Virus record (IMG/VR): IMGVR_UViG_3300009108_000751
Coordinates: 1 to 64,000 of that record
Strand: one strand, 5' to 3'
DNA length: 64,000 bases
Shown: one piece after another, positions 657 through 13,848 of the stretch
How positions within the stretch are numbered: the first letter of the stretch is position 1
Layout: each line of letters opens with the position of its first letter
Translations under genes and position numbers: made by a program
The notes under the pieces: generated by a model
The model's database searches: none
The model's input: only the letters and a program-made list of their open reading frames with translations
What the model was told of the DNA's origin: nothing

Positions 657-887
657 ATGAGTCACGTTGGAGAACCCGAGGGCGAGATTCCTCAGAACAT
701 TTCCTCCGAACCCTCGGGTTCTCCTTTCGTGCCCGGCGACTTAGTCCTTGTAAAGGATACGGCGCAGCAGGGCACGATCACACGTATTCCCTCCCAGTAC
801 TACTCGGAGGTTCACGTGAATGGCCGGAGGATGATGATGCCTAATGAGTGGCTCACGCGGTGTAACTCGGAAAGCCCAGGGTTATAA
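657..887 (+). CDS. small hypothetical protein, KOW/SH3-like
   Basis: FVPGDLVLVKD..QGTITRI pattern; ATG directly after the upstream stop. Confidence 0.5.
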   Translation: MSHVGEPEGEIPQNISSEPSGSPFVPGDLVLVKDTAQQGTITRIPSQYYSEVHVNGRRMMMPNEWLTRCNSESPGL

Positions 888-888
888 T
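860..888 (+). promoter_or_regulatory. GTGTAA-N17-TATAAT promoter
   Basis: GTGTAA 860-865, TATAAT 883-888, AGGAGG and ATG 908 downstream. Confidence 0.8.
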
Positions 889-907
889 ATAAGCGCAAGG
901 AGGAAAC

Positions 908-1219
908 ATGCAGATTGGCGATCTTATCAAGCCCAAGATGCACCTGGAAGCGCTTAGAGAACCGCATAGAGAGGATCACGGCTTACTTGAAGTGCACACA
1001 CGTTGGGAAGATCCTAAGAAGGAGTTTAAGATTCTCAATAGTCACTCAGGCGAGTTGCATGCGGTTGCGATGATTGTCGGCACGGAACGTGTCCGCAGGC
1101 GCGATCGGCGCAATAAGTCAGGTATCGCGATGATGGTACCCAAGATCAAGTTGCTCATCGGCGGTCAAGTTGCTTTGATCACCAAGGGCAAGTTGGAACA
1201 CCTGTTTGAACCGGTGTAA
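908..1219 (+). CDS. hypothetical protein (SH3-like N-terminus MQIGDLIK)
   Basis: Strong SD AGGAGG; its stop codon is the TAA of the next GTGTAA box. Confidence 0.7.
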   Translation: MQIGDLIKPKMHLEALREPHREDHGLLEVHTRWEDPKKEFKILNSHSGELHAVAMIVGTERVRRRDRRNKSGIAMMVPKIKLLIGGQVALITKGKLEHLFEPV

Positions 1220-1242
1220 CTCTAAAACAGTATAGATATAAT
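1214..1242 (+). promoter_or_regulatory. GTGTAA-N17-TATAAT promoter
   Basis: GTGTAA 1214-1219, TATAAT 1237-1242. Confidence 0.8.
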
Positions 1243-1260
1243 AAGGGCGAAGGAGGCTTC

Positions 1261-2583
1261 ATGGCCAAGAAAGAATCAACCGGCGATCTTCCTAAAGCAG
1301 TTCAGGACTACATGGACAAGCTTAAGGTTTCGGCGGAAGAATACGCTCAAAAGGTAGAGGACGCTAAGTCTTTTGACATTGATCCTCACTTGGTTAAGCT
1401 CATGTGGGACGAACCGTTTTATAGCGCTATTAGCCGCCGGATCAGCAAGTCAAGAAGCCTTGACCTCCCGACCGCCGGCGTCTGTGTGATCGATGGTTCA
1501 CCTAGTCTGCTCTGGAACCCGGTCTTCTTCAACGAGATGACTGAGAAAGAGGTGCGCGGTGTCCTGATCCACGAGTTCATGCACTTGATCTACGACCACG
1601 TGACGCTGAGGAAGCGGGATCCCCACATGCTGTGGAACCTGGCCACCGACTGCGCGATCAATAGCATGATCCCAGAAAGCAACCTACCCGTGGACTGTGT
1701 GTTCCCCGGCAAGATGAACCCCAAGGCGGATCCCACCGACCCGATCTGGAATGCGATCGCCTCCTTCCCGAAAGGCCAGAGCTCTGACTGGTACATGAGC
1801 CGGCTGATGGAAGACGAGGACGTCCAGCAGAAGATGGAGGATATCCAGAACGGTGAGGGTGACGCAGCGGAATACGGCTTCGATGACCACGAGGGTTGGG
1901 GCGACATGAGTGACGCTGAGAAGGAGCTGGTGAAAGGCAAGATCCGCGAGATCCTGCGGGACGCGGTGAAGGAAGCTGACGCCAAGAACGGCTGGGGTTC
2001 GGTTCCCTCCGACTGCCGCGAGCAACTGCGCTCAATGGTGAGTAATGAGGTGGACTGGAAAGCGATCCTCCGGCAAACCATTGGCATGGCGCACAGCTCC
2101 GAGCGTACCACCTCCCGCAAGCGGCGCAACCGGAAGTACCGGTTCATGCATCCCGGCGTGAAACGCAAACGGATGGCGCGCGTCCTCGTCGCGATCGATC
2201 AATCGGGCTCCGTGGGTAATGAAGCCCTCGAGCTCCTGTTCGGTGAGCTGGCGTCCCTCGCAAAGCGAGTTGACTTCGACATCGTGCACTTCGACACCTC
2301 CGTGGATGAGAAGAGCCTGACCACCTGGCGGCGCGGACAACGCATCGCGCCCCACCGCACGCGGATGGGTGGTACCGACTTCAACGCTCCCACCGAGTTC
2401 GTCAACAAGCACAAGGGCCAATACGACCTGATGGTGGTGCTCACTGACGGTGAAGCTCCGGAGCCCAAGCCGTGCCTCGTGCGTCGAGCCTGGATCCTCG
2501 TCCCTGGAACCTCGATGTACTTCGACACCCCTGAGACGGTGATCAAGATGAAAGCTGAGAAAGATAAAAAGAATGCTGCGTGA
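1261..2583 (+). CDS. DUF2201-type metallopeptidase fused to a vWA domain
   Basis: HExxH (LIHEFMH), NLATDCAIN, C-terminal MIDAS DQSGS...GGT...LTDG; partner AAA+ gene upstream. Confidence 0.85.
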   Translation: MAKKESTGDLPKAVQDYMDKLKVSAEEYAQKVEDAKSFDIDPHLVKLMWDEPFYSAISRRISKSRSLDLPTAGVCVIDGSPSLLWNPVFFNEMTEKEVRGVLIHEFMHLIYDHVTLRKRDPHMLWNLATDCAINSMIPESNLPVDCVFPGKMNPKADPTDPIWNAIASFPKGQSSDWYMSRLMEDEDVQQKMEDIQNGEGDAAEYGFDDHEGWGDMSDAEKELVKGKIREILRDAVKEADAKNGWGSVPSDCREQLRSMVSNEVDWKAILRQTIGMAHSSERTTSRKRRNRKYRFMHPGVKRKRMARVLVAIDQSGSVGNEALELLFGELASLAKRVDFDIVHFDTSVDEKSLTTWRRGQRIAPHRTRMGGTDFNAPTEFVNKHKGQYDLMVVLTDGEAPEPKPCLVRRAWILVPGTSMYFDTPETVIKMKAEKDKKNAA

Positions 2584-3398
2584 TCTGAGAGATTCTGTTT
2601 GGCACGCCGGCGTGGTGGTTGCCACCGTCAGCTTGAGTGCCGCTTTTCTGGGCGGGATCGGCCTGATCCTGGTTCGAGAAGCTTACCGTGACTGGAAGGG
2701 TGAGAAGATCAAGCCCATCAAAGTGTGGGAGGAGAAGAAGTGGCCCGACAGGGTGATGAAGACTCTTGCTGACGAGGATCCTAAGTCCGGATTGGATGTG
2801 CTATGATGTGGATTGCTGAGATTGCGATGTGGGTTCTGGCGACCCTGCTCATCACGGGCGGCTTCGCCGCGATCATCGCTAACGCGTTCTTTGGCTACCC
2901 TGACGGAGATTGACGTGCCCGTATGGCTCAACCACACCCTGATGGTTCTGGTCTGTGTCGCAGCATATGTCTTCTCCTTTCTAACACTTTACAAAACTTG
3001 ATGAGATTATGACCCTTTTAGAAACACTTGCTTTCTTGTTCGCAATTGCCTATCACGTCCTGATTGCCTGGTTCGGCATCACTACCCTGATCTGGATCTT
3101 TTGGGAACGTCGTACAGTCCGACCGCTGGAAGCCCGGATCAATCGGCTCGATTATGAGATCGAGGAGATCGAGGGGCACGACTTCATGCGAGGTGAGACC
3201 CCTGAAAGCCGAGCGCTACGCAAAGCACGAGACATCGATAAGCTGGCCATGAACGACGAGGAGGAGCGGATCGACAAGTTCCTGCGCAAGTGGGGCTTCT
3301 TTCGCGTGTTCTACCGCGACCCCTACTCCCGCTCAGCAACCCGTTACACCCGAGAACGCCAACGGCTACAAAAGAGCCTTGGCATTGTAGATTCCTGA
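2573..3398 (+). CDS. run of small membrane proteins (2573-2806, 2803-2913, 2915-3001, 3009-3398)
   Basis: Consecutive, overlapping short ORFs, each with one hydrophobic helix. Confidence 0.5.
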
Positions 3399-3408
3399 GA
3401 GACACAGT

Positions 3409-3720
3409 ATGATCACCAAAGGAGATCTGATGATCGAAGATAAAGAAGAGCCCCAGATCCGAGACCTGAAGGCGTTGATGGATAAGTGCGGAGACAGCCT
3501 TCCCACACCATGGGACCGCGATTGGGGTGCAGCCTCACCGAGTTACCCATGGCACGTATACGTGGTGTCTCAAGGTCAGAAACCGCACCGCATCTGGTCC
3601 TTCAAGGATCGCCAGAGCGCGCACGATCTGGCTAAGAAGAACCTGCCGACTTACCGCAAGTCCGGAGGCTTCGTGATGGTGCACAACTACCTCACTGGTA
3701 AGTCGATCACGCTCAAATGA
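3409..3720 (+). CDS. hypothetical protein
   Basis: 103-aa ORF, ATGA overlap with the next gene. Confidence 0.55.
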   Translation: MITKGDLMIEDKEEPQIRDLKALMDKCGDSLPTPWDRDWGAASPSYPWHVYVVSQGQKPHRIWSFKDRQSAHDLAKKNLPTYRKSGGFVMVHNYLTGKSITLK

Positions 3721-4328
3721 TCAAGCTGCTTAGTAAGCTTCCTTGGTCTTTCACGCTCGCCGTCTCCGGCGGGCCTGACTCTATGGCGGCACTCGACTTC
3801 TTCCATCGAGGCAAGAAGGACTTTAGGGTTGTCCACGTTAATCACGGCACAGTGCACGCATCCGAAGCTGAAGAACTGGTAAGGTCTGAGTGCGCACGTC
3901 TCCAGGTGAACTTGCGCGTAGAGAAGGTCATTCGAAAGCGAGACCTGCAGGAGAGCTGGGAAGAGTTCTGGCGCAACGAGCGCTACCGGATCTTCGACAC
4001 AGTCACAGGTCCTGTGCTCACCTGTCACAACCTTGACGACGCGGTCGAGTGGTGGGTTTACACAGCAATGCATGGCCGGCCGCGACTTATTCCCGAGCGC
4101 AACGGCTCCGTGATCCGACCTTTCCTGCTCACTCCCAAGAAGACGCTGAGGAAGTGGTGCAAGGATCACGACGTTGCCTTCTGCGACGATCCGGGCAATG
4201 TCAATGAACAATATATGAGATCCATCGTTCGCCACCAGATAGTGCCTCTGGGCAAGCGGGTCAATCCGGGCCTGGAAAAGGTCGTGAAGAAGATGCTGAT
4301 CGCGCAACACGGCGCGGTGGGCAAGTGA
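3717..4328 (+). CDS. tilS: tRNA(Ile)-lysidine synthetase-like protein, PP-loop catalytic domain only
   Basis: AVSGGPDS, HVNHG, TCHNLDDAVE, IRPFL, DDPGN, RSIVRH match TilS N-domain motifs; only 203 aa. Confidence 0.8.
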   Translation: MIKLLSKLPWSFTLAVSGGPDSMAALDFFHRGKKDFRVVHVNHGTVHASEAEELVRSECARLQVNLRVEKVIRKRDLQESWEEFWRNERYRIFDTVTGPVLTCHNLDDAVEWWVYTAMHGRPRLIPERNGSVIRPFLLTPKKTLRKWCKDHDVAFCDDPGNVNEQYMRSIVRHQIVPLGKRVNPGLEKVVKKMLIAQHGAVGK

Positions 4329-4609
4329 GCGAACTCCAAGAAGGGCGACCTGAGGTTGAGCCGGGTGACTTGATCGTGTTCGAGGACGGCACCGATCACC
4401 CGTCAAACTTTCTGGTATGTGAGATCTGCAGGGACAAGGGCGATAGACCAGTACTGCGGGGATTATGGAATAGCGACACCGGCCAGATGGGCGCAGTGCT
4501 TCGAGGTTACGCTGAAGTCATGACTGCCGACATGCTCAAGCAGCACTTTCTAACTCGGTCTACCGACAAGTGGATCCGGGAAGACAAGATCCTGAGGATC
4601 TGGGGATGA
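4325..4609 (+). CDS. hypothetical protein (SH3-like)
   Basis: GTGA overlap with tilS; VEPGDLIVF. Confidence 0.5.
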   Translation: MSELQEGRPEVEPGDLIVFEDGTDHPSNFLVCEICRDKGDRPVLRGLWNSDTGQMGAVLRGYAEVMTADMLKQHFLTRSTDKWIREDKILRIWG

Positions 4610-4866
4610 AAATTGAACCGCAAAGCAAGCTAATGCACGCTATCCTGAACGCTGACCGCGTCTTCAAGGGCATTATCGACGGTTCCTACACTCTTACCAC
4701 TGACGGAGGAGTATTTAGATTAGGGCACGGGGAAGACCACTGGCTGTGGAAGGGGCATAATCGAGTAGCCTTCGTAGTTAAACAAGGTGACGAATGGCAC
4801 GTTACAATGCTAGCACCAGAACATATTGACCTACTGGAGGGCCACGATGCTGGAACTACTCCTTAG
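4606..4866 (+). CDS. hypothetical protein
   Basis: ATGA overlap; probable start 4606. Confidence 0.5.
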   Translation: MKIEPQSKLMHAILNADRVFKGIIDGSYTLTTDGGVFRLGHGEDHWLWKGHNRVAFVVKQGDEWHVTMLAPEHIDLLEGHDAGTTP

Positions 4867-5152
4867 CCTTGCGTTGACGGCACCGCCGCAATACTATCAT
4901 AAACCCAAACAACCCAAGGCCACTTACCGAAAGGCCGTCCAAAAGCGCCAAGTAGACGGAGTTGTCAGGTATCTCCGCCGGCAAGATCCTGCAGTTATCC
5001 AGCAGGTGATGCGTCGTATGGGCTGGATGTTTCGCACCGAACCGCGGGATGCTTGCCGAAAGAAGAAGAAGTCGGATCTGGAAAAGATCAACGACTGGGA
5101 AATGAGAATGCTGTGTGAAATGGCAGGGCTTCCCTGTTACAAGAAAAGGTAA
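4847..5152 (+). CDS. hypothetical protein with signal-peptide-like N-terminus
   Basis: SD GGAGG; MLELLLSLALTAPP. Confidence 0.5.
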   Translation: MLELLLSLALTAPPQYYHKPKQPKATYRKAVQKRQVDGVVRYLRRQDPAVIQQVMRRMGWMFRTEPRDACRKKKKSDLEKINDWEMRMLCEMAGLPCYKKR

Positions 5153-5181
5153 GTGTAAATCTCCCTCGTGATCGTTATAAT
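5153..5181 (+). promoter_or_regulatory. GTGTAA-N17-TATAAT promoter driving the tRNA
   Basis: GTGTAA 5153-5158, TATAAT 5176-5181. Confidence 0.8.
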
Positions 5182-5197
5182 ATAATGTATGAGATAT

Positions 5198-5274
5198 GGG
5201 GGATTAGCTCAATTGGTCAGAGCACTCGACTCATAATCGATAGGTTCTGGGTTCAAGTCCCAGGTCCCCTACCA
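5198..5274 (+). tRNA. tRNA with CAT anticodon (Ile2 favoured; elongator Met possible)
   Basis: Cloverleaf: acceptor GGGGGAT/GTCCCCT, D arm GCTC/GAGC, anticodon arm TCGA-CTCATAA-TCGA, T arm CTGGG-TTCAAGT-CCCAG, encoded CCA; lacks initiator hallmarks. Confidence 0.92.
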
Positions 5275-5584
5275 ACCAGACCTGAGCACGTCGTCAAACT
5301 GCTCACACGGGAGTTACACAGTCATGGATGTTAGAGCACCCTGTCCTTTCGCCACTTCGATCGCAGCGTATCTCACGTTTCCTAACCCTGGCGCAAAGCC
5401 CAAGGTGTTCGTGACACGTGAGCAGTTGTGTGAGATGAAGTTAGTGGACGCTGAGAAACGCCCAGTGGAACGCAAAGGTTTAGGCGAGAACGTTGATACT
5501 TATGCTTGATGTACGACGAATCCCTTATAGGTGTTATGATGCTGGGCTTTATTGCTTTCGGGATCATGATATCGATGGCGTTTG

Positions 5585-5899
5585 ATGGCGATCTCTGAAG
5601 TACTTCGCCTAAGATACCTCAAGGAACCTGGAGAAGAAATGATGAATGGTGTGACCTACTACACTGTTAGTTATCACATGCAACCGATAGCACACTTCAA
5701 GGATTATAGTGCAGCCGTGAGATTCGCCTCTGAAGAACGTAAGCGTCGGCTTGAGGCAGTCAAAACCCTGGATCCGCCCATGCTAAAGGGTGAAATGCGA
5801 GGAGAAGTTGTCAGCATCAAGTACGGAGTTGCAGTTCAGCAAGTTGATATCGTCTTTGCAGACATGATAGACAGTAGCGAGGAAATCAAGTTTGGCTGA
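5585..5899 (+). CDS. hypothetical protein
   Basis: ~104-aa ORF in the co-directional run. Confidence 0.5.
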   Translation: MAISEVLRLRYLKEPGEEMMNGVTYYTVSYHMQPIAHFKDYSAAVRFASEERKRRLEAVKTLDPPMLKGEMRGEVVSIKYGVAVQQVDIVFADMIDSSEEIKFG

Positions 5900-6179
5900 C
5901 AACACGCGTGCTTTACTAATGCGGGTTTTGACTGGCAAGGGCACAGATCTAGACAAGCTCGACGCAGTTTCTAACTTAATCGCAGAAAAGATGGCGATGT
6001 CCGAAGCAATGTCTGACAAGATAACAGCAGGAAGCTTTGTCCAGGGACACAACGTTCTCAAGCACTTGCTTAGCTTAGATCGTGTTCTCGAGACAATGTC
6101 TCTGATGGAGACTACGGGAGATCACGATGTCCCAGAACTCTGTGTTGTCACTGACGGTGACTGCGTCGGGAAAAACTAA
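5892..6179 (+). CDS. hypothetical protein
   Basis: 95-aa ORF overlapping the previous stop. Confidence 0.5.
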   Translation: MADNTRALLMRVLTGKGTDLDKLDAVSNLIAEKMAMSEAMSDKITAGSFVQGHNVLKHLLSLDRVLETMSLMETTGDHDVPELCVVTDGDCVGKN

Positions 6180-6201
6180 CAAATCAGGCTCAATAGCTCT
6201 T

Positions 6202-6230
6202 GTGTAACATACTTACTAACGTGGTATGAT
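6202..6230 (+). promoter_or_regulatory. GTGTAA-N17-TATGAT promoter
   Basis: GTGTAA 6202-6207, TG-G-TATGAT 6225-6230. Confidence 0.7.
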
Positions 6231-6249
6231 GTACGCGGAGGAAAAAGGT

Positions 6250-6468
6250 ATGGCTTCCTTAAAGCGACAACGAAAAGTTATTAGTCCTCGACAGCGTCCC
6301 CGTCACACCCCACCCAAAGAACTCGTGCTGGAACTACCACTTCCACGTCACGAGAGTATACCCAGGGATCACGACGTTGAAGCGCAAGAAAGCTCGAAAG
6401 AGCAAGGCGAGGTTATCATCAACCTCAACGAAGAAGACGATCCCTGTGTCATCCGTGATGCGTTCTAA
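6250..6468 (+). CDS. small disordered protein (basic N-terminus, LELPLP motif, acidic tail)
   Basis: SD GGAGG; start 6250 because ATG 6226 overlaps the -10 box. Confidence 0.55.
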   Translation: MASLKRQRKVISPRQRPRHTPPKELVLELPLPRHESIPRDHDVEAQESSKEQGEVIINLNEEDDPCVIRDAF

Positions 6469-6637
6469 GTTCACCACCGCAGAGATCGAAGAAGTCACTT
6501 TTGAATACCAAAGGATGCTAGATGCCGCGATATCCGACGGCAACAAGAAGAGCATCAATGCCCTAGTCCAAATCATCGCCGACCTTCACGTTTGTGTAAA
6601 ACACGCATCTGATGGTTATAATAAGGATGAAGACTAG
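6458..6637 (+). CDS. hypothetical protein
   Basis: Overlaps the previous stop; probable ATG 6458. Confidence 0.45.
   Translation: MRSKFTTAEIEEVTFEYQRMLDAAISDGNKKSINALVQIIADLHVCVKHASDGYNKDED
6594..6622 (+). promoter_or_regulatory. GTGTAA-N17-TATAAT promoter
   Basis: GTGTAA 6594-6599, TATAAT 6617-6622. Confidence 0.8.
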
Positions 6638-6646
6638 GAGATAAAG

Positions 6647-6787
6647 ATGGACGCGATACTCGCTCTCGCTTTACTATTCGGGGTTCCACTACTATCAGCA
6701 CTTTTTATTGTACGTGAGGCGCGCCTTGCGCGCGAGAGGCACGTTGCAAAGCTCCAAGAGGAAAGGGAGAATGAACGATGGATCTGA
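6647..6787 (+). CDS. 46-aa membrane peptide
   Basis: SD AGGAG, MDAILALALLFGVPLLSALFIV (below the ORF-track cutoff). Confidence 0.55.
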   Translation: MDAILALALLFGVPLLSALFIVREARLARERHVAKLQEERENERWI

Positions 6788-6987
6788 TCCAAGAAGGTAA
6801 TCTGCTCATCCAGCAGGTGACTGACCTGCTCAACGAAGTGAGTCCTGAGAAATGTCCAAGCGGCCCTGAGTTCACTAACTTTCTTGTTGCGAACGCTGAT
6901 CGTCTTCCTACTGACGCGGGCACAATCGTGACGCTCGCTGCAGACCTTGAAGCTCAGTTACTGGAGCACGAAGGCACCGTTCACTGA
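6778..6987 (+). CDS. hypothetical protein
   Basis: SD GGGAG; ends just before the next promoter. Confidence 0.55.
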   Translation: MDLIQEGNLLIQQVTDLLNEVSPEKCPSGPEFTNFLVANADRLPTDAGTIVTLAADLEAQLLEHEGTVH

Positions 6988-6988
6988 T

Positions 6989-7017
6989 GTGTAAGTTCGA
7001 AGCGCTGAGTATATAAT
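6989..7017 (+). promoter_or_regulatory. GTGTAA-N17-TATAAT promoter
   Basis: GTGTAA 6989-6994, TATAAT 7012-7017. Confidence 0.8.
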
Positions 7018-7038
7018 ATCAGCGATTGGAGGCAAGGC

Positions 7039-7908
7039 ATGGCTAAGAATACTGATATTCAAAGGCAATTGAATGCAATACGCGACGAGATGCGTGCTCT
7101 TCACGACAGGCGGGACGAGCTGGTCGAAATTGCCAAGGCTCGCGGCATTCAGCGCTTTGAGGATGCGAACGGCTGCGAGAGGTGCCGAGGTCGTGGTTGG
7201 GTGGTAACCTGGGACACGATGGACATCCTCGACGGCTCGGCCGCCGATTACGGTGACTGCCCTGAAAAGTCCTGCACTCCGGAAACACGCAAAGCCTCGG
7301 GCCTCTATCCCGAGAATAATCGCTACGATCACAACCGCTACACGACCTGGGCACACTTTCACGATCTGGCTGAAGCTGAGCGTGACGAGTGGTTCGGGAT
7401 CGATCCGCAGCTGACCATCCTCAACGACAGGTATAACAACACTGAGATGGCGGCGCGCCCCACAAAGGGTAAGCTGGTCGAGGTGATCGCCAAGGCGAGG
7501 TCACGCAACTCCGCTGCAGCCGGTGTGGTAGGCAAGGTGTTCTGGTATGGCTGCAATGACTGGGGCACCATCAAGGTCGGCATACTGGATATCGATGGCA
7601 ACAAGCACTGGACAACTGAGAAGTCTGTCACTGTGCTCAAACAGAAAGCCGGGAAGGAATACGATCCGACATACGACGAGCAGTATCCCCTCCTGTGCAA
7701 GGTGGTGCGAAAATCCAACAAAGCGATCTGCGTCATGACGCCCGGGGCGAGTAAGTTCACCGGCGGTGAGTGGATCCCGTGGTCGCAGATCCTCAATGCT
7801 GATCAGGTTCGAGAACAGATCGGCAATAAGCTTCTGAAGGATGGTTGCCCGGCGACTGTGATGTTACCACCCTGGTTAGCCAAGAAGAAGGGTTACATTC
7901 GTGGCTGA
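7039..7908 (+). CDS. hypothetical protein: coiled coil, Cys zinc motif, SH3-like modules
   Basis: CERCRGRG...CPEKSC; SD GGAGG. Confidence 0.7.
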   Translation: MAKNTDIQRQLNAIRDEMRALHDRRDELVEIAKARGIQRFEDANGCERCRGRGWVVTWDTMDILDGSAADYGDCPEKSCTPETRKASGLYPENNRYDHNRYTTWAHFHDLAEAERDEWFGIDPQLTILNDRYNNTEMAARPTKGKLVEVIAKARSRNSAAAGVVGKVFWYGCNDWGTIKVGILDIDGNKHWTTEKSVTVLKQKAGKEYDPTYDEQYPLLCKVVRKSNKAICVMTPGASKFTGGEWIPWSQILNADQVREQIGNKLLKDGCPATVMLPPWLAKKKGYIRG

Positions 7909-8128
7909 GAAAACTCGGCACTATGAGAAGCAGGTTGCGGTGATCATGCCTCGCTGGTGCATCAACATGATTCTCGACCATCTCGATATGCAGTATGACT
8001 CGCTGCAGCAAGAGCAGGACTTCCACAACCGAGTGGGCGATACAAAGTCCCTTGCCAGTGCTCAGGACGAGCTCAAGCTTTACAGTGACGCGATCGACCA
8101 GATCGCAGGCCAACTGGACAATAGCTAA
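7901..8128 (+). CDS. hypothetical protein
   Basis: Overlaps the previous stop. Confidence 0.5.
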   Translation: MAEKTRHYEKQVAVIMPRWCINMILDHLDMQYDSLQQEQDFHNRVGDTKSLASAQDELKLYSDAIDQIAGQLDNS

Positions 8129-8159
8129 ACATTCTCACTTTTCGATTTACAATGACCTC

Positions 8160-8345
8160 ATGGGTAATGGCGTCAAGATAGATCTGAAGGTGGGTGACTG
8201 GATCCTCACGGGCAGATTCAAGAACAAACGAGAAATGGTAAAGACCATCGGCGTTGATCAGCTGGGACAACCCACTGTTAACGGGAAGCCGATGTTGAAG
8301 TTTCGTATTGCGAAGACAATACCCGAAGGGAAGAAGAAAAAGTGA
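8160..8345 (+). CDS. small phage protein (LKVGDWILTGRFKNK...GQPTVNG pattern)
   Basis: Resembles a short module I recognise from large phages; probable ATG 8160. Confidence 0.55.
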   Translation: MGNGVKIDLKVGDWILTGRFKNKREMVKTIGVDQLGQPTVNGKPMLKFRIAKTIPEGKKKK

Positions 8346-8725
8346 TTGCTACACTGGTGACGATTCTAGCAGCTGCGCCGTTTACTACTTACGTAGATTG
8401 CTCGAACATCGTGGGCTACGATGAGAAGAAGAACGCGTATCTTATGAAGTGCACGTTAGCAGTAGGAGGAGAAGACAAGTCTAAGGCGAATCTGATTCCA
8501 GTCTACTGCATCATGGACCTCAAGGAAAGCGCTTTCATGTGTAAGTTTGATCTAAAGCCTAAGAGCAACTCAGATAACGCTCCCCGCGGTCACACAGGAT
8601 GGTTACCACAACTCCCGCCGGGCGCCGTTTTGCGATCCATCGTTCAGCAGCAAGAACGTTTGCTCCAGCCGATATGCCCACCAGCAGTCCATTCTCCTGA
8701 GCTAAACGACGAGCTCTCTCAATAG
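8342..8725 (+). CDS. hypothetical secreted-type protein; 3' end overlaps cysK antisense
   Basis: MIATLVTILAAAP N-terminus; GTGA overlap. Confidence 0.4.
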   Translation: MIATLVTILAAAPFTTYVDCSNIVGYDEKKNAYLMKCTLAVGGEDKSKANLIPVYCIMDLKESAFMCKFDLKPKSNSDNAPRGHTGWLPQLPPGAVLRSIVQQQERLLQPICPPAVHSPELNDELSQ

Positions 8726-9434
8726 CATCTGCTGTCGACACCTTCATGACATCATCCATCTTGGCGGGGTCGAGCAAGAAGTCCTGACCGTCGTTGATTC
8801 CCTGAATGCCGTGATTCTGCGCATCTTCCTCTGGGACAACTAGCACGCATTTATACGTGAGGAACTTGGACTTTTCCTTGTGCTCCCACATCCCCATCAT
8901 TGTTCCCCCGGTACCTGCTCCACCCACGAAACCTGACCATGTCATGGTGGATTCTAGCTGAAGGTGAATCTCTGGGCCCGTGGTTTCCCGATGACACGCT
9001 ACGTTGTCGAGGTTCTCAAATTGCATCGGTGACCAGACATCTCCACCGGTGAGCATCATTTGGTCTCTCAAAGCGATTGCTGCCTCGAAGTCACTGTGTC
9101 CCACCTCGACCACTTCTGCACCAAAAGCACGCATCATCTGCTTGCGCTCCTCGCTCATGTTGCACGGCATGATGATCTTCACGGGATTGCCCAACGCTGC
9201 ACCTGCCGCGGCAAGCGCGATGCCCGTGTTGCCTGAGGTGGCTTCGATGAAAGTGGTGTTCTCGCCGAACTCATCGCGCTCCTGTGCACGTTTGACCACG
9301 TACGCGATCATCCGATCCTTGATGCTGCCAGTGGGGTTGTAAGTTTCCAGCTTGGCGTACAGCTGCTTGGAGATCTTGACTAGGGGTGTATTCCCAACAT
9401 TAGTGAAGTAACCGTTTTGCTTCATTCTCATCAT
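8559..9434 (-). CDS. cysK: PLP-dependent cysteine synthase (CysK/CysM family)
   Basis: GNTPLV, YAKLETYNPTGSIKDR (PLP lysine), EATSGNTGIALA, GAGTGGT, GISAGAN, DRGERYLS. Confidence 0.9.
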   Translation of the reverse strand: MMRMKQNGYFTNVGNTPLVKISKQLYAKLETYNPTGSIKDRMIAYVVKRAQERDEFGENTTFIEATSGNTGIALAAAGAALGNPVKIIMPCNMSEERKQMMRAFGAEVVEVGHSDFEAAIALRDQMMLTGGDVWSPMQFENLDNVACHRETTGPEIHLQLESTMTWSGFVGGAGTGGTMMGMWEHKEKSKFLTYKCVLVVPEEDAQNHGIQGINDGQDFLLDPAKMDDVMKVSTADAIERARRLAQENGLLVGISAGANVLAAERWIAKRRPAGVVVTILCDRGERYLSCS

Positions 9435-9492
9435 CCTTGAGAATAACTATACTCGCGAACTCAAAGGAGTATAATAGAGTAAAGGAGGCACA

Positions 9493-10197
9493 ATGTCATA
9501 CTTGGGATATGTAAAGCTCATGACAGCGCACTGCAAAGCGTTTGCAAACCCTACGATCTTAGAGGTCGGAGTCGACAGGGGTCAAACCGCGCTTCCCTTG
9601 ATATCCAACTTGCTCCGCTTATCGAGAGACTTCCGGTACGTTGGCGTCGACATAAGGCATGAACCGTGCTTCAGTGAGCAAATATCTCAGATGGAAGGCG
9701 TCAAGACATACCTGGGAGATAACAACCCGGACTTCAACGTCGCCTACACGATAGAAAACAGCCTGGATATTTTGCCCAACCTTGCAAAAGCAGGTAACAA
9801 GTTTGACCTAATCTTGATAGACGGAGATCATAACTACGGTACCGTCAAGCAAGAGCTATCCTACTTGAACGATCTTTCACACACTCACACAATGGTGATC
9901 TGTGACGACTATCGAGGGCGACACGAGAATAACGACAACTTCTACAAAGATTACGAGTCACACAAAAGTATCGATACCTTTATCGACGTTGAGATTCACC
10001 CGTCTAAAAAAGGCGCCAACCAGGCGATCGATGAGTGGCTAGAGGAACAAGAAGGAAAGTGGTGGGCATACAAGCCGCCTCAGTATGAGCCCATCTTTCT
10101 TTGTGGAAGCGGGATTCTACGTCTCCAGTCGGACGAGCACCCCCGCGGGTTTTCACAACAGGACTACGTGATCACTTACCGCGAACCAGAATCCTAA
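9493..10197 (+). CDS. class I SAM-dependent methyltransferase (Methyltransf_24-like)
   Basis: ILEVGVDRG, FDLILIDGDHNY, ICDDY; SD AGGAGG, TATAAT at 9470. Confidence 0.75.
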   Translation: MSYLGYVKLMTAHCKAFANPTILEVGVDRGQTALPLISNLLRLSRDFRYVGVDIRHEPCFSEQISQMEGVKTYLGDNNPDFNVAYTIENSLDILPNLAKAGNKFDLILIDGDHNYGTVKQELSYLNDLSHTHTMVICDDYRGRHENNDNFYKDYESHKSIDTFIDVEIHPSKKGANQAIDEWLEEQEGKWWAYKPPQYEPIFLCGSGILRLQSDEHPRGFSQQDYVITYREPES

Positions 10198-10246
10198 CGC
10201 TTATCTTGCCGGGAGCTCATAATAAAATCTTCTATACTACTAACAC

Positions 10247-10640
10247 CTATAGCGCATAGATAGACGCACGCTATAGCGCACACACCTCAGACCGGCCATG
10301 CGATCCCTGCGTTCTGTGTCATTTTAGCCAACGCGGGCACGTAAGCCGTTTTAGCGAACGCGCACGTCTACGTCATTTTAGCGAACGCGTACGCGCGGTT
10401 TAGGCGAGCGGTTTAGGCCAGCGACGCACAGCAGTGGACATTTGTAATCCCCTCCCATATAAGCGAAGGGCAGTGGTCATCGGGCTACCGTTTTAGCGAA
10501 AGTCTGCGCTGTCATTTTAGAGAGCGATTTTAGTCCCGTGACCACTGCTGCTCTACTTAGGCCCCGCGCGCGCCCTTGATGTCACGTTTTGTCTCTCATT
10601 GTCTCATTTTGTCTCTCGAAGACGCAGTCGGACCCACTGC
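10247..10640. repeat. non-coding repeat block (TTTTAGC[G/C]AACGCG iteron-like repeats, inverted GCAGTGG/CCACTGC, TGTCTC x3)
   Basis: Repeats at 10318-10335, 10346-10362, 10372-10389 (27-bp period); related copies at 10395, 10408, 10488, 10511, 10526. Confidence 0.8.
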
Positions 10641-10879
10641 TGCCAGTCACTCACTGCAAATAAAATGTATAAGCAGTTGTACATTATGTCCACTCACTTT
10701 CTCTCAAATAGAGATGAACATTCCCTATAGCGGGGGTACAATATGAACATAGGTTACCTGAGGGAGATCGAGTGATGGCCCTCGACGATCGCGCAGGCCA
10801 GCGTGTGACTCGTGCACTCGTCTCTCCCTCGCTATAGCGCAACCCATTCAAGCGAGCCACCGCCGGTTCGAGCGAGGTA

Positions 10880-11083
10880 GTGTTGATCAATCTAACTGAT
10901 GAAGAGCTCGACGAGATATCGACTTACACAGGTTTGGATATCGCAATGCAGTACCCGCTCGATGCCACGCCCATCATATTCTTCAGTCATGACGGTCAAG
11001 GCGCCGTCAAGTTCGTCACGGTTCTCAAAGATGCTCCGATCGGCTCAGAGTCGGTGTGTAAGTGGGAGGGGGATGGTTTATAA
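10880..11083 (+). CDS. hypothetical protein
   Basis: SD GAGG; stop lies inside the next TATAAT. Confidence 0.45.
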   Translation: MLINLTDEELDEISTYTGLDIAMQYPLDATPIIFFSHDGQGAVKFVTVLKDAPIGSESVCKWEGDGL

Positions 11084-11084
11084 T
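11056..11084 (+). promoter_or_regulatory. GTGTAA-N17-TATAAT promoter
   Basis: GTGTAA 11056-11061, TATAAT 11079-11084; CCTGGGGAGG leader. Confidence 0.8.
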
Positions 11085-11112
11085 AGCCGTGAATAAAGCC
11101 TGGGGAGGCACG

Positions 11113-11682
11113 ATGAAAGTAGAAGTTTACAAGAAGTATCGGCACGGCAAGACCTACGTCTCAGGCGAGCTCAAGGGAGCGGGTGTTTACGACTCTGATC
11201 CGGATCTCGAAGTTGATGGGATCGTGTATCCTCACCGTGATCGCGCCATGCTCATGCTCACTGAAGCTGGTGACAGGGGCGAACTGGTCCTCCAGCTCAT
11301 GCTCAGTGAAGCTCAAGTCGACCACCTGAGGGACGTGCTCTATGAGGTGAGTAAGCAGATGATGGTGGATCGGAACCGGCGAGAGCTGGAGGCAGGACAC
11401 GCCCGACAAAAGCGTGTAAGCGCGGAAGAGGCCGGTTATAATAGGGGTGAAGATAACGGAGACGACTTCATGAAGCCTAAACTCTACTCTTTCAAGTTTC
11501 ACCGCAACGAGTTCGGGGATGTTGGCTTCAACCAGATCATGGCCCCAAGCCTTGAGCACGCCATCGAGTTCGCTAAGGACGAGTTCGAAGGTGGAACCGC
11601 AAATCTCAAGGTTGACGTTGACACCTTCAAGGTGGTCGAAGACGTGAACGCTTACTACAACTCATTCCCGCTGATGGATTAG
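11113..11682 (+). CDS. hypothetical protein
   Basis: SD GGGGAGG, ATG 11113. Confidence 0.65.
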   Translation: MKVEVYKKYRHGKTYVSGELKGAGVYDSDPDLEVDGIVYPHRDRAMLMLTEAGDRGELVLQLMLSEAQVDHLRDVLYEVSKQMMVDRNRRELEAGHARQKRVSAEEAGYNRGEDNGDDFMKPKLYSFKFHRNEFGDVGFNQIMAPSLEHAIEFAKDEFEGGTANLKVDVDTFKVVEDVNAYYNSFPLMD

Positions 11683-11691
11683 GAGAAAGCC

Positions 11692-11922
11692 ATGCAGCTC
11701 GCACACGCTCAAGCGATCGTTGAAGAACTTACACAGACTTTAGGTGTTGAAGCCTCTGTTCGAGAGAACTACTCGGGTCGAGGCATGTATGGCCGTACGA
11801 CCGCGGCGGTCAGCACTCACTACTCGGAAGATGTCGTCGCCGCTGCGCGCGATCTCGGCCTTCCGCTCCGTCGCTCCAACCTCAACGTTGACAGCATGGG
11901 CTTGGGCAAGGTGGTTTACTAG
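11692..11922 (+). CDS. small phage protein with YSGRGMYG motif
   Basis: SD AGGAG; motif recognised from small phage proteins. Confidence 0.65.
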   Translation: MQLAHAQAIVEELTQTLGVEASVRENYSGRGMYGRTTAAVSTHYSEDVVAAARDLGLPLRRSNLNVDSMGLGKVVY

Positions 11923-11961
11923 TGGTGTAAGTCGTTCGACTCTCACGACGACCCAAGAGCT

Positions 11962-11990
11962 GTGTAAGTTCCGGGGCAGCCTGGTATAAT
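11962..11990 (+). promoter_or_regulatory. GTGTAA-N17-TATAAT promoter
   Basis: GTGTAA 11962-11967, TATAAT 11985-11990; an orphan GTGTAA at 11925 has no -10. Confidence 0.8.
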
Positions 11991-12024
11991 ATCCACGTAA
12001 AGAACAAAGCCTAAGGGGCGCAAC

Positions 12025-12354
12025 ATGGCAACCGGCATCTTCATTCCCAAGCGCGAGATCACCGAAGCTATTCAGCGACACTGTGACCGCATTCAAGAAG
12101 AGCTTAGCAACTCCTTCGATATCGGTGACCCAGTTCAGGCCAGGCACGGTCGGGCACTGTGGGACGCTCAGGTCGAGATTGCTCGAGACAGGCTGGAAGC
12201 CAGAATGGAACAAGCCTTGGGCACTGCGGTGGACGACATCATCGTGGAGCTCGACGACGGTGAGTTCTTCGCTCAAGCAGCGCAAGCAATTGACGAGGAG
12301 GAGACCATTCCCGGTGTCCAACAGCTGTCGGAGTTGTGTAAGCCGCAGCGCTGA
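12025..12354 (+). CDS. hypothetical acidic protein
   Basis: Follows the promoter leader; stop falls in the next promoter spacer. Confidence 0.6.
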   Translation: MATGIFIPKREITEAIQRHCDRIQEELSNSFDIGDPVQARHGRALWDAQVEIARDRLEARMEQALGTAVDDIIVELDDGEFFAQAAQAIDEEETIPGVQQLSELCKPQR

Positions 12355-12364
12355 GTGTTATAAT
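12336..12364 (+). promoter_or_regulatory. GTGTAA-N17-TATAAT promoter
   Basis: GTGTAA 12336-12341, TATAAT 12359-12364; leader shares 22 nt with that at 11991. Confidence 0.8.
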
Positions 12365-12397
12365 ATCCACGTAAAGAACAAAGCCTGGGGAGGCAAT

Positions 12398-12721
12398 ATG
12401 GTTTTAGAAGTTCAAACTCACAACGATGGTAACATCAACGTTAACGGCACGTGCCTCCAAGGCTACCTCAACGACACTCAGGGCCAGCAGCTGGTCGAGA
12501 AGTTCGGTGAACCCCTGCTCGGATATCCCGAGGACAAGGTCGAGTTCGAGTGGAACCTCCTGATCGAGGGCAAGCCGATCACGATCTACTCGTGGAAGAA
12601 CTACGGCCAGAAGTCGTTCGAGCAGATCCGGGTGTGGAACGTGGGTGGCAAGAACAAGCAAGTGCTCGACCTCCTCCGTCAGGTCGGGCTCAGGCCCAGT
12701 GAGTCACCCAGCTTTTGGTAG
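12398..12721 (+). CDS. small phage protein (GTCLQGY...FGEP...DKV..EW...TIYSWK...WNVGG pattern)
   Basis: SD GGGGAGG, ATG 12398; pattern recognised from aquatic phages. Confidence 0.7.
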   Translation: MVLEVQTHNDGNINVNGTCLQGYLNDTQGQQLVEKFGEPLLGYPEDKVEFEWNLLIEGKPITIYSWKNYGQKSFEQIRVWNVGGKNKQVLDLLRQVGLRPSESPSFW

Positions 12722-12722
12722 T

Positions 12723-12751
12723 GTGTAACTCCAAGGGCAGCTGGTTATAAT
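12723..12751 (+). promoter_or_regulatory. GTGTAA-N17-TATAAT promoter
   Basis: GTGTAA 12723-12728, TATAAT 12746-12751. Confidence 0.8.
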
Positions 12752-12790
12752 ATAAACGAAGAAAACGCAAACAACCTGGGGAGGTTCTAA

Positions 12791-13534: not shown

Positions 13535-13588
13535 GCACAACTCTCCCCAGGGGCGGGAGGTGAGGCAACTCCCTCCCGCCGTGCCTAG
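13531..13588 (+). terminator. GC-rich stem-loop after radA (terminator or processing/stabilising site)
   Basis: GGCGGGAGG-T-GAG-GCAA-CTC-CCTCCCGCC within outer CTAGGCAC/GTGCCTAG; no clear U tract. Confidence 0.5.
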
Positions 13589-13597
13589 GGGTCTTGT

Positions 13598-13626
13598 GTG
13601 TAAGATGAGAAGTCATAGGTTATAAT
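13598..13626 (+). promoter_or_regulatory. GTGTAA-N17-TATAAT promoter
   Basis: GTGTAA 13598-13603, TATAAT 13621-13626. Confidence 0.8.
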
Positions 13627-13653
13627 AGCCCTGAAGATAACAAGGAGCTCCTA

Positions 13654-13848
13654 ATGGATCCCAACAAAGTTCACGTCGTCAATGCTTATACTCGCAAAGT
13701 CTACGGTTCGTTTGACCTGGACATTGATGCACGTCAATACATGCGCAACATGCTCCTGAAGGAGTGCGACGGTCCTAATGATGACGACCGCGAGGTGCCA
13801 AAGATCTGGTGCTTCGATGCGCGTGGAGTTGAGACTACATCCTTCTAG
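13654..13848 (+). CDS. hypothetical protein
   Basis: SD AAGGAG; stop abuts the next promoter. Confidence 0.6.
   Translation: MDPNKVHVVNAYTRKVYGSFDLDIDARQYMRNMLLKECDGPNDDDREVPKIWCFDARGVETTSF

What the first reader, a model, noticed from the sequence alone, without database searches (positions are those of the whole stretch)
3717..5274. Minimal TilS plus CAU tRNA in the GC-rich region, matched to AUA-rich genes in the AT-rich region
Seen: a 203-aa TilS catalytic domain without the C-terminal tRNA-binding domains, ~0.9 kb from a promoter-driven CAU tRNA whose anticodon arm (CGA-CUCAUAA-UCG) matches E. coli tRNA-Ile2. By hand count, the gene at 1261-2583 uses ATA for 0 of 20 Ile, while 52764-53753 uses ATA for 10 of 24. 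Known: lysidine at C34 converts CAU tRNA to an AUA reader; E. coli TilS needs C4:G69 and C5:G68, but this tRNA has G4:C69 and G5:C68. Inference: the phage may supply a semi-orthogonal TilS/tRNA pair early to translate its AUA-rich later genes. The atypical acceptor stem leaves elongator Met as a real alternative.
Basis: partly seen in the sequence, partly recalled or inferred. Interest (0 to 1): 0.68.

Follow-up and report, generated by a model that had tools for sequence, protein, structure and literature searches.

The report
Phage minimal TilS with tRNA-Ile2 cassette
A jumbo phage carries a stripped-down copy of the enzyme that turns a CAU-anticodon tRNA into a reader of the rare isoleucine codon AUA, together with its own such tRNA; comparison with hundreds of other phages shows this pair is a recurring, phage-specific module that fits their AUA-rich genes.

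Summary
ORF 3717-4328 is a 203-aa TilS catalytic domain with no C-terminal tRNA-binding domains. A CAU tRNA lies 869 nt downstream (5198-5274) behind its own promoter.

- The short TilS belongs to a large, phage-exclusive clade: at least 535 IMG/VR contigs and one close relative among 185,579 species' genomes.
- A CAU tRNA is the nearest tRNA to TilS in 39 of the 61 related loci that have any tRNA, often 8-100 nt away.
- All 43 distinct linked tRNAs have A73 and a non-C:G 3:70 pair, a published negative discriminator for Met and fMet tRNAs. The window's tRNA has G3:C70.
- TilS genes avoid ATA (11.9% of Ile against 30.9% in their own loci; p about 6e-43), while AGA, TTA and GC3 are unchanged.
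- TilS and the tRNA sit in a GC-rich, ATA-poor block holding 19 copies of a sigma-70-like promoter, consistent with early expression.

Not shown: lysidine chemistry, orthogonality to the host, timing, and the host itself. Phage TilS and phage tRNA-Ile2 were each reported before; I found no report of the NTD-only architecture as a conserved cassette. I rate it a new variant of a known kind.

The parts
3717..4328 (+). NTD-only (203 aa) TilS-like PP-loop ATPase; PP-loop S17-G18-G19-P20-D21-S22
   Evidence: Pfam PF01171 at 2e-30. TIGR02432 scores 101.5 bits, above the 93.6 cut-off. Motifs align with 3a2k, 1ni5 and 1wy5. The AF2 model has pLDDT 92.4, and the top Foldseek hits are TilS with TMq 0.82-0.83.
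5198..5274 (+). tRNA with CAU anticodon, proposed tRNA-Ile2 (substrate for lysidine at C34); CCA encoded
   Evidence: ARAGORN and Rfam at 64.7 bits. It has G3:C70, A73 and a paired 1:72. The best E. coli match in all 5426 genomes is annotated tRNA-Ile. L070 has a tRNA with the same stems 14 nt after its TilS.
5153..5181 (+). Dedicated promoter of the tRNA: GTGTAA, 17 nt, TATAAT; the -10 box ends 16 nt before the tRNA 5' end
   Evidence: One of 19 copies of the composite motif in 860-17,687. A homologous promoter precedes the CAU-tRNA cluster of the relative L091.
1214..1242 (+). Nearest upstream copy of the same promoter motif; probable start of the transcript that includes the DUF2201/VWA gene, small ORFs and TilS
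   Evidence: No other copy lies between 1214 and 5153. That TilS is read from it is an inference.
3409..3720 (+). 103-aa ORF overlapping the TilS start by 4 nt; conserved in this position only in the close lineage
   Evidence: 58-71% identity in L091-L095 and absent from the 80 more distant loci. No Pfam family.
860..17715 (+). GC-rich (50-55%), ATA-poor, promoter-dense block that contains TilS and the tRNA; proposed early region
   Evidence: 19 promoter copies, all on the + strand. ATA is 13.4% of Ile at 6.4 per 1000 codons; AGA is 8% of Arg.
25000..64000 (+). AT-rich (38-42% GC), ATA-rich part of the window; the block continues to about 110 kb in the genome
   Evidence: ATA is 29.8% of Ile at 19.4 per 1000 codons over 25-110 kb. 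There are no copies of the promoter motif.

Best explanation
The window opens a jumbo-phage genome: a 235,681-bp contig estimated to be about 70% complete. Its first 18 kb form a GC-rich, promoter-dense block, probably transcribed early by the host RNA polymerase. This block encodes a lysidine synthetase reduced to its catalytic N-terminal domain and, behind a dedicated promoter, a tRNA with anticodon CAU. I propose that the enzyme adenylates C34 of this tRNA and replaces the adenylate with lysine, giving lysidine. That change switches the tRNA from a Met/AUG reader to an Ile/AUA reader charged by the host IleRS. The phage thereby raises AUA-decoding capacity for a genome that uses ATA at 13.5 per 1000 codons overall and 19.4 per 1000 in its AT-rich 25-110 kb block. 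Lacking CTD1 and CTD2, the enzyme most likely recognises only the anticodon arm, so the pair works as a portable module independent of the host TilS's acceptor-stem rules. Shown here: family membership of the catalytic domain, absence of the C-terminal domains, conserved linkage to CAU tRNAs, non-Met acceptor features, ATA avoidance in TilS genes, and the promoter array. Inferred: the chemistry, the recognition mode, the early timing and the benefit to the phage.
For: Enzyme. TIGR02432 scores above its curated cut-off. The motifs SGGxDS, RxxRY, HxxDDxxE, RP(F/L)L and D..N....R..R are conserved against three solved TilS enzymes and are invariant across the phage family. The best fold matches are TilS. 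Module. At least 535 viral contigs carry a relative. Of 80 fetched loci, 47 have a CAU tRNA within 10 kb. CAU is the nearest tRNA to TilS in 39 of the 61 loci that have any tRNA, often 8-100 nt away on the same strand. The syntenic relative L091 has TilS followed about 1 kb later by CAU, Arg(UCU) and Leu(UAG) tRNAs, which would read the rare-codon trio AUA, AGA and CUA. A Pelagibacteraceae single-cell contig has the same pair. tRNA identity. Among 43 distinct linked tRNAs, 3:70 is G:C in 31, A:U in 11, U:A in 1 and C:G in none, and A73 is present in all 43. G3/A3 with C70/T70 was never seen in 288 Met and 457 fMet bacterial tRNAs (PMC1635315). The best E. coli match is tRNA-Ile, and 36 of 44 linked tRNAs are closer to ileX/Y than to metT. 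Function. TilS genes use ATA for 11.9% of Ile codons against 30.9% in the rest of the same loci (odds ratio 0.30, p 6e-43; lower in 62 of 70 loci). GC3, AGA and TTA are unchanged. TilS sits at a median 8th percentile within its locus, and neighbouring genes are not depleted. This is expected if translating TilS must not depend on its own product. Carrier contigs are ATA-rich, with a median of 17.8 per 1000 codons; published classes call anything above 10 high (PMC12514573). Timing. There are 19 sigma-70-like promoters in 860-17,687 and none in 18-109 kb. Precedent. Lysidine was detected on a phage-encoded tRNA(CAU) (PMC13191261).
Against: No biochemical data exist for any NTD-only TilS. Deleting only CTD2 from a type I enzyme strongly reduced activity (PMC11947777), so a domain-less enzyme may be weak or may need a partner that I did not find. 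PA5oct carries two CAU tRNAs with identical bodies that differ only in the acceptor stem, which is hard to reconcile with recognition of the anticodon arm alone. In 33 of 80 loci no CAU tRNA lies within 10 kb, and in five loci the adjacent tRNA is Leu(UAA). The 642-kb phage has a tRNA-Ile(UAU) as well as a TilS. In this genome the regional contrast is a general codon-usage shift, not specific to ATA. The host, and therefore the real shortage of AUA decoding, is unknown. ORF sets came from a crude longest-ORF caller. There was no TilS-negative phage control for ATA richness.
Confidence: 0.78

Rival explanations
1. The tRNA is an ordinary elongator tRNA-Met. The short TilS, if active, works on the host's own tRNA-Ile2, and the two genes are neighbours only because phage translation genes cluster.
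For: ARAGORN labels it Met by its anticodon. It lacks the C4:G69 and C5:G68 pairs used by E. coli TilS. In 33 of 80 loci TilS has no CAU tRNA within 10 kb. Overall similarity to E. coli ileX/Y is only slightly above that to metT (68.8% against 62.3%).
Against: G3:C70 is a published negative discriminator for Met and fMet tRNAs. None of the 43 linked tRNAs has C3:G70. Met has a single codon, so a phage gains little from an extra elongator Met tRNA, whereas the co-clustered tRNAs read rare A-ending codons. CAU is the nearest tRNA far more often than its 25% share of the tRNAs in these loci would predict.
Confidence: 0.07
2. The protein is a PP-loop enzyme derived from TilS that makes a different modification. 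It might use another amine nucleophile or act on another cytidine or RNA, so AUA decoding is not its purpose.
For: It has lost both tRNA-recognition domains that all characterised TilS enzymes carry. It is only 24-27% identical to solved TilS enzymes. The clade is separated from cellular TilS by a long branch. Some loci pair it with Leu(UAA) instead of CAU.
Against: It scores above the curated equivalog-domain cut-off for the TilS N-domain. TilS structures rank above the thiolases TtuA and NcsA in the fold search. No invariant cysteines exist for an Fe-S cluster. ATA-specific codon avoidance in the gene points directly at AUA decoding.
Confidence: 0.08
3. The enzyme is promiscuous because it lacks discriminating domains, and its main role is to act on host CAU tRNAs. 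It could convert tRNA-Met to an AUA reader, or alter tRNAs as host takeover or as protection from anticodon nucleases, with the phage tRNA as a side substrate.
For: No CTD1 or CTD2 is present to reject tRNA-Met. The PA5oct twin tRNAs share one anticodon arm. The gene lies in a putative early, host-takeover-type region full of small ORFs.
Against: A delta-CTD2 TilS still rejected tRNA-Met in vitro, so discrimination does not need the acceptor-stem reader. G30:C40 is conserved in 38 of 43 linked tRNAs, which suggests a specific cognate arm. Tight physical coupling to a cognate tRNA gene is not needed for an enzyme aimed at the host.
Confidence: 0.05

Closest known systems
Bacterial tRNA(Ile)-lysidine synthetase TilS, type I (E. 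coli, Geobacillus kaustophilus; PDB 1ni5, 3a2k) and type II (Aquifex aeolicus; 1wy5, 2e89)
   Same: Same PP-loop catalytic fold (TMq 0.82-0.83), same conserved motifs, and the same presumed substrate class, a CAU tRNA that becomes an AUA reader.
   Different: It is 203 aa against a median of about 444 aa in cellular genomes. It has neither CTD1 nor CTD2, whereas the current literature states that TilS has at least one appended domain. Identity is only 24-27%. It forms a separate, phage-only clade.
TilS of Pseudomonas jumbo phages PA5oct and MIJ3 (reported in 2019 as a putative lysidine synthase of unknown role, PMC6892783)
   Same: Same short architecture (612-nt gene), 42% identity, jumbo-phage context, and near a tRNA cluster that includes a G3:C70 CAU tRNA.
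   Different: In PA5oct the gene lies about 6-10 kb from the tRNA cluster, not next to a dedicated tRNA. That paper did not connect the enzyme with a CAU tRNA or with ATA usage.
Phage-encoded tRNA-Ile(CAU) of T4-like phages (PMC1524935) and the lysidine-bearing tRNA(CAU) of a T4-like vibriophage (cited in PMC13191261)
   Same: A phage CAU tRNA with Ile-type signatures that reads AUA after lysidinylation.
   Different: Those phages are thought to rely on the host TilS. Here the phage brings its own enzyme, linked to the tRNA.
Rare-codon tRNA sets used in expression strains (argU, ileY, leuW), from my own knowledge
   Same: The relative L091 clusters CAU, Arg(UCU) and Leu(UAG) tRNAs directly after TilS. 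These would decode the same three codons: AUA, AGA and CUA.
   Different: This is a natural phage module, and it adds the modifying enzyme that the Ile2 tRNA needs.

Membership tests
TilS (tRNA(Ile)-lysidine synthetase) | PP-loop ATP-binding motif SGGxDS in an N-type ATP pyrophosphatase fold | tested here: met
   S17-G18-G19-P20-D21-S22 is invariant across the family. PF01171 matches at 2e-30. The fold matches TilS with TMq 0.82-0.83.
TilS (tRNA(Ile)-lysidine synthetase) | Score above NCBIfam's curated cut-off for the TilS N-terminal equivalog domain (TIGR02432) | tested here: met
   101.5 bits against a cut-off of 93.6.
TilS (tRNA(Ile)-lysidine synthetase) | Full-length equivalog model (NF007942 / PRK10660) | tested here: not met
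   49.6 bits against a cut-off of 606; only profile positions 22-208 of 439 are matched.
TilS (tRNA(Ile)-lysidine synthetase) | CTD1 substrate-binding domain (PF09179), present in types I and II | tested here: not met
   The ORF ends at the end of the N-terminal domain. There is no six-frame match in the 235-kb record at E<=1. Caveats: the record is about 70% complete, and the model exceeds its cut-off in only 3 of 14 control genomes.
TilS (tRNA(Ile)-lysidine synthetase) | CTD2 acceptor-stem-reading domain (PF11734), type I only | tested here: not met
   No match in any frame. Neighbouring ORFs have no Pfam domains.
TilS (tRNA(Ile)-lysidine synthetase) | Forms lysidine at C34 of tRNA-Ile2 from ATP and lysine | not testable with these tools
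   Indirect support only: linkage to CAU tRNAs and ATA avoidance in the gene.
tRNA-Ile2 (CAU, lysidine-dependent) | CAU anticodon in a CUCAUAA loop on a canonical elongator cloverleaf, not an initiator | tested here: met
   Rfam tRNA at 64.7 bits. The 1:72 pair is G:U, so it is paired. The anticodon stem lacks the GGG/CCC signature, and the D stem is GCUC, so there is no A11:U24.
tRNA-Ile2 (CAU, lysidine-dependent) | 3:70 pair other than C:G (G3/A3 with C70/U70 excludes Met and fMet in 234 bacterial genomes) | tested here: met
   The window has G3:C70. Among 43 linked tRNAs, none has C:G at 3:70. The rule comes from PMC1635315.
tRNA-Ile2 (CAU, lysidine-dependent) | C4:G69 and C5:G68, the determinants for E. 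coli type I TilS | tested here: not met
   The window has G4:C69 and G5:C68. These pairs are read by CTD2 and are not conserved where CTD2 is absent (PMC1635315), so this failure is expected for an NTD-only enzyme.
tRNA-Ile2 (CAU, lysidine-dependent) | IleRS identity elements A73, C29:G41 and U12:A23 (E. coli; recalled from my own knowledge of Nureki et al. 1994) | tested here: met
   A73, C29:G41 and U12:A23 can be read directly from the sequence. That the unknown host's IleRS uses the same elements is an assumption.
tRNA-Ile2 (CAU, lysidine-dependent) | Carries k2C34 and is charged with Ile | not testable with these tools
No modification data are available.
TtcA / TtuA / NcsA tRNA thiolases (other PF01171-type PP-loop enzymes) | Conserved cysteines that hold an Fe-S cluster | tested here: not met
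   No invariant Cys in the 28-sequence family alignment; only C59 is nearly invariant. TtuA and NcsA rank below TilS in the fold search at 14-18% identity.

The most novel reading that the evidence does not exclude
The NTD-only enzyme is a self-sufficient lysidine synthetase that reads nothing but the anticodon arm. With its tRNA it would form a naturally portable, host-independent AUA-decoding cassette, in effect a third TilS architecture ('type III') confined to phages. In the stronger version, having no discriminating domains, it also lysidinylates host or phage CAU tRNAs of Met type. The PA5oct twin tRNAs, which differ only in the acceptor stem, hint at this. The phage would then actively re-partition the AUG/AUA decoding pool during infection.
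Probability: 0.15. Interest if true: 0.85.

Novelty: new variant of a known kind. Interest (0 to 1): 0.62.

Why it matters
TilS is described as exclusive to bacteria, essential, and dependent on appended domains to tell tRNA-Ile2 from tRNA-Met. How type II enzymes manage without CTD2 is an acknowledged open question (PMC11947777). A large natural family that has dispensed with both appended domains, each member next to its presumptive substrate, gives a direct experimental handle on the minimal determinants of lysidine formation and of Ile/Met discrimination. It also adds a tRNA-modifying enzyme to the ways phages adapt to host codon usage beyond carrying tRNA genes. It explains an annotation left without a function since 2019 (MIJ3/PA5oct). 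It could also supply compact orthogonal TilS/tRNA pairs for reassigning the AUA codon. ATA self-avoidance in the enzyme gene is a simple, general signature that could be used to find other enzymes needed for decoding a particular codon.

Tried and rejected
- **Detached tRNA-binding domain:** seven small neighbouring ORFs have no Pfam domain. PF09179 and PF11734 have no six-frame match in the genome. The downstream ORFs are not conserved anywhere. The upstream 103-aa ORF is conserved only in the close lineage. So no universal partner was found.
- **Generic sigma-70 scan:** it did not call a promoter before the tRNA. I set this negative aside after finding the phage's own recurring motif.
- **Silva et al. 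reference tRNA sets:** no supplements are held, so I could not build a formal three-way classifier and could not run tRNAscan-SE. I used the paper's published 3:70 rule and a comparison with E. coli tRNAs instead.
- **Nakanishi 2005 PNAS paper on type II recognition:** not held.
- **Maximum-likelihood tree with the default method:** it did not finish in 300 s. I used FastTree instead. All 153 distinct rows were kept and only exact duplicates were dropped.
- **Assembly chimera as the cause of the GC jump:** rejected. The same promoter motif recurs at 146-216 kb, and the GC-rich block is syntenic with independent contigs L091-L094.
- **An ATA-specific regional contrast in this genome:** rejected. 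AGA, TTA and CTA shift in parallel with ATA.
- **Host identification:** not achieved. The closest isolates are only 42% identical in TilS.
Full report
**What is there**

The window is the first 64 kb of a single 235,681-bp virus contig. IMG/VR classes it as linear and CheckV estimates it as about 70% complete, so all counts of "absent" genes are lower bounds.

ORF 3717-4328(+) encodes 203 aa.
- It matches Pfam PF01171 at 2e-30.
- It exceeds NCBIfam's curated cut-off for the TilS N-terminal equivalog domain (TIGR02432, 101.5 against 93.6 bits), but covers only the first half of the full-length model.
- Against the three solved TilS enzymes the alignment ends where their N-terminal domains end. 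All hallmark motifs are conserved: SGGxDS, RxxRY, HxxDDxxE, RP(F/L)L and D..N....R..R.
- An AlphaFold model built on 28 homologues is confident (pLDDT 92.4). Its best structural matches are TilS from E. coli and Aquifex (TMq 0.82-0.83), ahead of the thiolases TtuA and NcsA.

The CAU tRNA lies at 5198-5274(+), 869 nt downstream, with CCA encoded. The genome as recovered has only one other tRNA, Ser-GGA at 212 kb, plus a tmRNA.

All were reproduced.
- The acceptor stem is G1:U72, G2:C71, G3:C70, G4:C69, G5:C68, A6:U67, U7:G66.
- The CGA/UCG core of the anticodon stem matches E. coli tRNA-Ile(CAU).
- ATA is 0 of 20 Ile codons in 1261-2583 and 10 of 24 in 52764-53753.

With a crude longest-ORF gene set, ATA is 13% of Ile codons (6.4 per 1000 codons) in the first 18 kb. 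It is 30% (19.4 per 1000) at 25-110 kb. On a published scale, more than 10 per 1000 is "high" and E. coli has 4.9 (PMC12514573).

**The enzyme belongs to a large, phage-only, domain-less TilS clade**

- A word-based search found 447 protein clusters at E<=1e-5, nearly all 197-220 aa long.
- Cultured examples are the PA5oct/MIJ3-like Pseudomonas jumbo phages (42% identity). There the gene was reported in 2019 as a putative TilS of unknown role (PMC6892783).
- Among one genome each of 185,579 prokaryotic species, only one locus is a close relative. It is a 7-kb contig in a Pelagibacteraceae single-cell assembly, most simply explained as a phage captured with the cell. Everything else is at most 35% identical.
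- ORF lengths are 196-265 aa (median 206) in the viral loci and 223-552 aa (median 444) in cellular genomes.
- In a FastTree phylogeny of the N-domains, 75 phage rows and 78 cellular rows fall on opposite sides of a single branch (SH-like support 99, length 0.73). Both sets were chosen as best matches to the query, so this shows separation, not rooted monophyly.
- No CTD1 or CTD2 is detectable in any frame of this genome or in the neighbouring ORFs.

**The enzyme travels with a CAU tRNA**

ARAGORN on the 80 fetched loci found 194 tRNAs, of which CAU is the commonest (48).
- 47 loci have a CAU tRNA within 10 kb.
- In 39 of the 61 loci with any tRNA, CAU is the nearest one to TilS. It is frequently 8-100 nt away on the same strand.
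- L070 has, 14 nt after its TilS, a tRNA with the same acceptor and anticodon stems as the window's.
- The syntenic relative L091-L094 shares the gene order AAA_5, DUF2201..., TilS, with 56% TilS identity. About 1 kb downstream it has CAU, Arg(UCU) and Leu(UAG) tRNAs. If the CAU tRNA is Ile2, these read AUA, AGA and CUA.
- The other tRNAs in these loci are mainly Asn(GUU), Arg(UCU), Leu(UAA) and Thr(UGU), the usual complement of AT-rich phages.

**Is the tRNA Ile2 or Met?**

Silva et al. classified CAU tRNAs of 234 bacterial genomes. They found that G3/A3 with C70/T70 never occurs in Met or fMet tRNAs, which have C3:G70. They also found that C4:G69 and C5:G68 are not conserved where TilS lacks CTD2 (PMC1635315).
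- The window's tRNA has G3:C70.
- Among 43 distinct TilS-linked tRNAs, 3:70 is G:C in 31, A:U in 11, U:A in 1 and C:G in none.
- A73 and the CUCAUAA loop are invariant, and G30:C40 is present in 38 of 43. The 4:69 pair varies freely: C:G 17, G:C 16, A:U 9.
- The tRNA is not an initiator. Its 1:72 is paired, and it lacks the GGG/CCC stem and A11:U24.
- In all 5426 E. coli genomes its best match is annotated tRNA-Ile. By overall similarity, 36 of 44 linked tRNAs are closer to ileX/Y than to metT, which is weak but consistent.

The overlooked 3:70 pair argues against Met identity. A formal isotype classifier could not be run.

**A functional signature**

If TilS is needed to read AUA, its own mRNA should avoid AUA.
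- Across 70 distinct loci, TilS genes use ATA for 11.9% of Ile codons against 30.9% in the rest of the same loci (odds ratio 0.30, p 6e-43; lower in 62 of 70).
- GC3 (0.37 against 0.35), AGA/Arg (0.35 against 0.37) and TTA/Leu (0.23 against 0.26) are essentially unchanged.
- Within its own locus, TilS sits at a median 8th percentile for ATA fraction. It is in the lowest decile in 33 of 64 loci (Wilcoxon p 3e-9).
- Genes within 3 kb are not depleted: 29.9% against 31.5%.

The avoidance is specific to the codon and to the gene. I regard it as the strongest indirect evidence that the family's role is AUA decoding.

Carrier contigs are AT-rich (median GC 39%) and use ATA at a median of 17.8 per 1000 codons. 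I had no TilS-negative control set.

**Expression context**

A 12-mer around the tRNA's -10 box recurs. Extending it gave a composite motif: GTGTAA, 15-18 nt, TATAAT.
- It occurs 19 times, always on the + strand, between 860 and 17,687.
- It is absent from 18 to 109 kb, with about eight copies at 146-216 kb.
- Shuffled genomes give about 5 copies in total.

The tRNA has its own copy at 5153-5181. The nearest copy upstream of TilS is at 1214.

The relative L091 has the same promoter class, with 17 copies in 20 kb, one of them in front of its CAU-tRNA cluster.

A dense array of sigma-70-like promoters in front of many small ORFs is typical of phage early regions. Early expression of the pair is therefore plausible but inferred.

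The ATA-rich part of the window encodes auxiliary-type genes and no recognisable structural genes: DUF444, a GroEL-like chaperonin, PIN-PhoH, a carbamoyltransferase, NeuB and glycosyltransferases. "Later genes" is therefore not established. The GC-rich block is poor in all A-ending rare codons, not only ATA.

**What remains open**

- No NTD-only TilS has been assayed.
- Removing CTD2 from a type I enzyme greatly lowered activity and relaxed 3:70 discrimination, although tRNA-Met was still rejected (PMC11947777).
- PA5oct carries an initiator-like CAU tRNA plus two CAU tRNAs with identical bodies, one with C3:G70 and one with G3:C70. Whether the short enzyme distinguishes them is unknown. It bears directly on the recognition mode and on the "orthogonal pair" idea.
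- Some loci lack a nearby CAU tRNA or place Leu(UAA) next to TilS.
- The host is unknown.

**Verdict**

Phage TilS and phage tRNA-Ile2 have each been noted before. In the literature I could search, I found no description of three things: the domain-less architecture as a phage-exclusive clade, its conserved pairing with an Ile2-type tRNA, or the ATA self-avoidance. I class it as a new variant of a known kind, of moderate to high interest.

Noticed in passing
window 860-17715 (+), also G000 146-216 kb: A phage-specific sigma-70-like promoter class: GTGTAA, 15-18 nt, TATAAT, often GTTATAATATAA. There are 19 copies in the GC-rich first 18 kb, none at 18-109 kb and about eight later. The class is conserved as GTG[T/C]AA...TATAAT in the relative L091.
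   Followed up: partly
window 1-20000 vs 25000-64000: There is a sharp compositional step inside one phage genome: 50-55% GC against 38-40%. All A-ending rare codons shift with it (AGA is 8% of Arg against 44%). It is not an assembly chimera, because the motif and the synteny are shared with independent contigs.
   Followed up: partly
window 34087-34408 (+): A phage-encoded tmRNA (Rfam RF00023, 137.8 bits) with tag peptide ANDDFDIYAIAA lies in the AT-rich block, next to a PIN-PhoH gene at 34711-36024.
   Followed up: no
L083 559-635 and 1040-1116 (PA5oct, MK797984.1): Two CAU tRNAs have identical D, anticodon and T arms and differ only in the acceptor stem, one with C3:G70 and one with G3:C70. 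They form a natural Met/Ile2-type pair that would test how an NTD-only TilS discriminates.
   Followed up: partly
window 3409-3720 (+): A 103-aa ORF overlaps the TilS start by 4 nt. It is conserved at 58-71% identity in the same position only in the close lineage (L091-L095). It has no Pfam family.
   Followed up: partly
window 26-655 and 1261-2583 (+): An AAA_5 (MoxR-like, by synteny with L091) gene and a DUF2201 metallopeptidase/VWA gene lie upstream of TilS. The order AAA_5, DUF2201, ..., TilS is conserved in L091-L094.
   Followed up: no
window 8559-9434 (-): A PLP-dependent, cysteine-synthase-like gene (PF00291 at 3e-57) is the only large minus-strand gene in the promoter-dense block. It looks like a host-derived auxiliary gene.
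   Followed up: no
window 26359-32153 (+): A DUF444 (YeaH-like) gene is followed by two large PHROGs of unknown function (phrog_35217 and phrog_22605) and a GroEL-like chaperonin.
   Followed up: no
window 45789-62864 (+): This is a glycan-type gene cluster in the ATA-rich block: a Nol-like carbamoyltransferase, NeuB (nonulosonic acid synthase) with a SAF domain, and glycosyltransferases.
   Followed up: no
L033, L047, L048, L064, L074: In these viral contigs the tRNA directly after the short TilS (35-137 nt) is Leu(UAA), and no CAU tRNA lies within 10 kb.
   Followed up: no
L096 (CACHXE010000024.1, Pelagibacteraceae single-cell assembly): The only close cellular-database relative of the short TilS sits on a 7-kb contig, with a G3:C70 CAU tRNA 317 nt downstream. 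It is probably phage DNA co-sorted with a SAR11 cell, which hints at one host group for this module.
   Followed up: partly
G000 212131-212218 (outside the window): The only other tRNA in the recovered genome is Ser(GGA). Ser(GGA) also lies near TilS and the CAU tRNA in L008 and L018.
   Followed up: no
L085 (LR756502.1, 642-kb phage): This huge phage has a short TilS, a CAU tRNA with C3:G70/C4:G69/C5:G68, and also a tRNA-Ile(UAU). That would give it two possible routes to AUA decoding in one genome.
   Followed up: no
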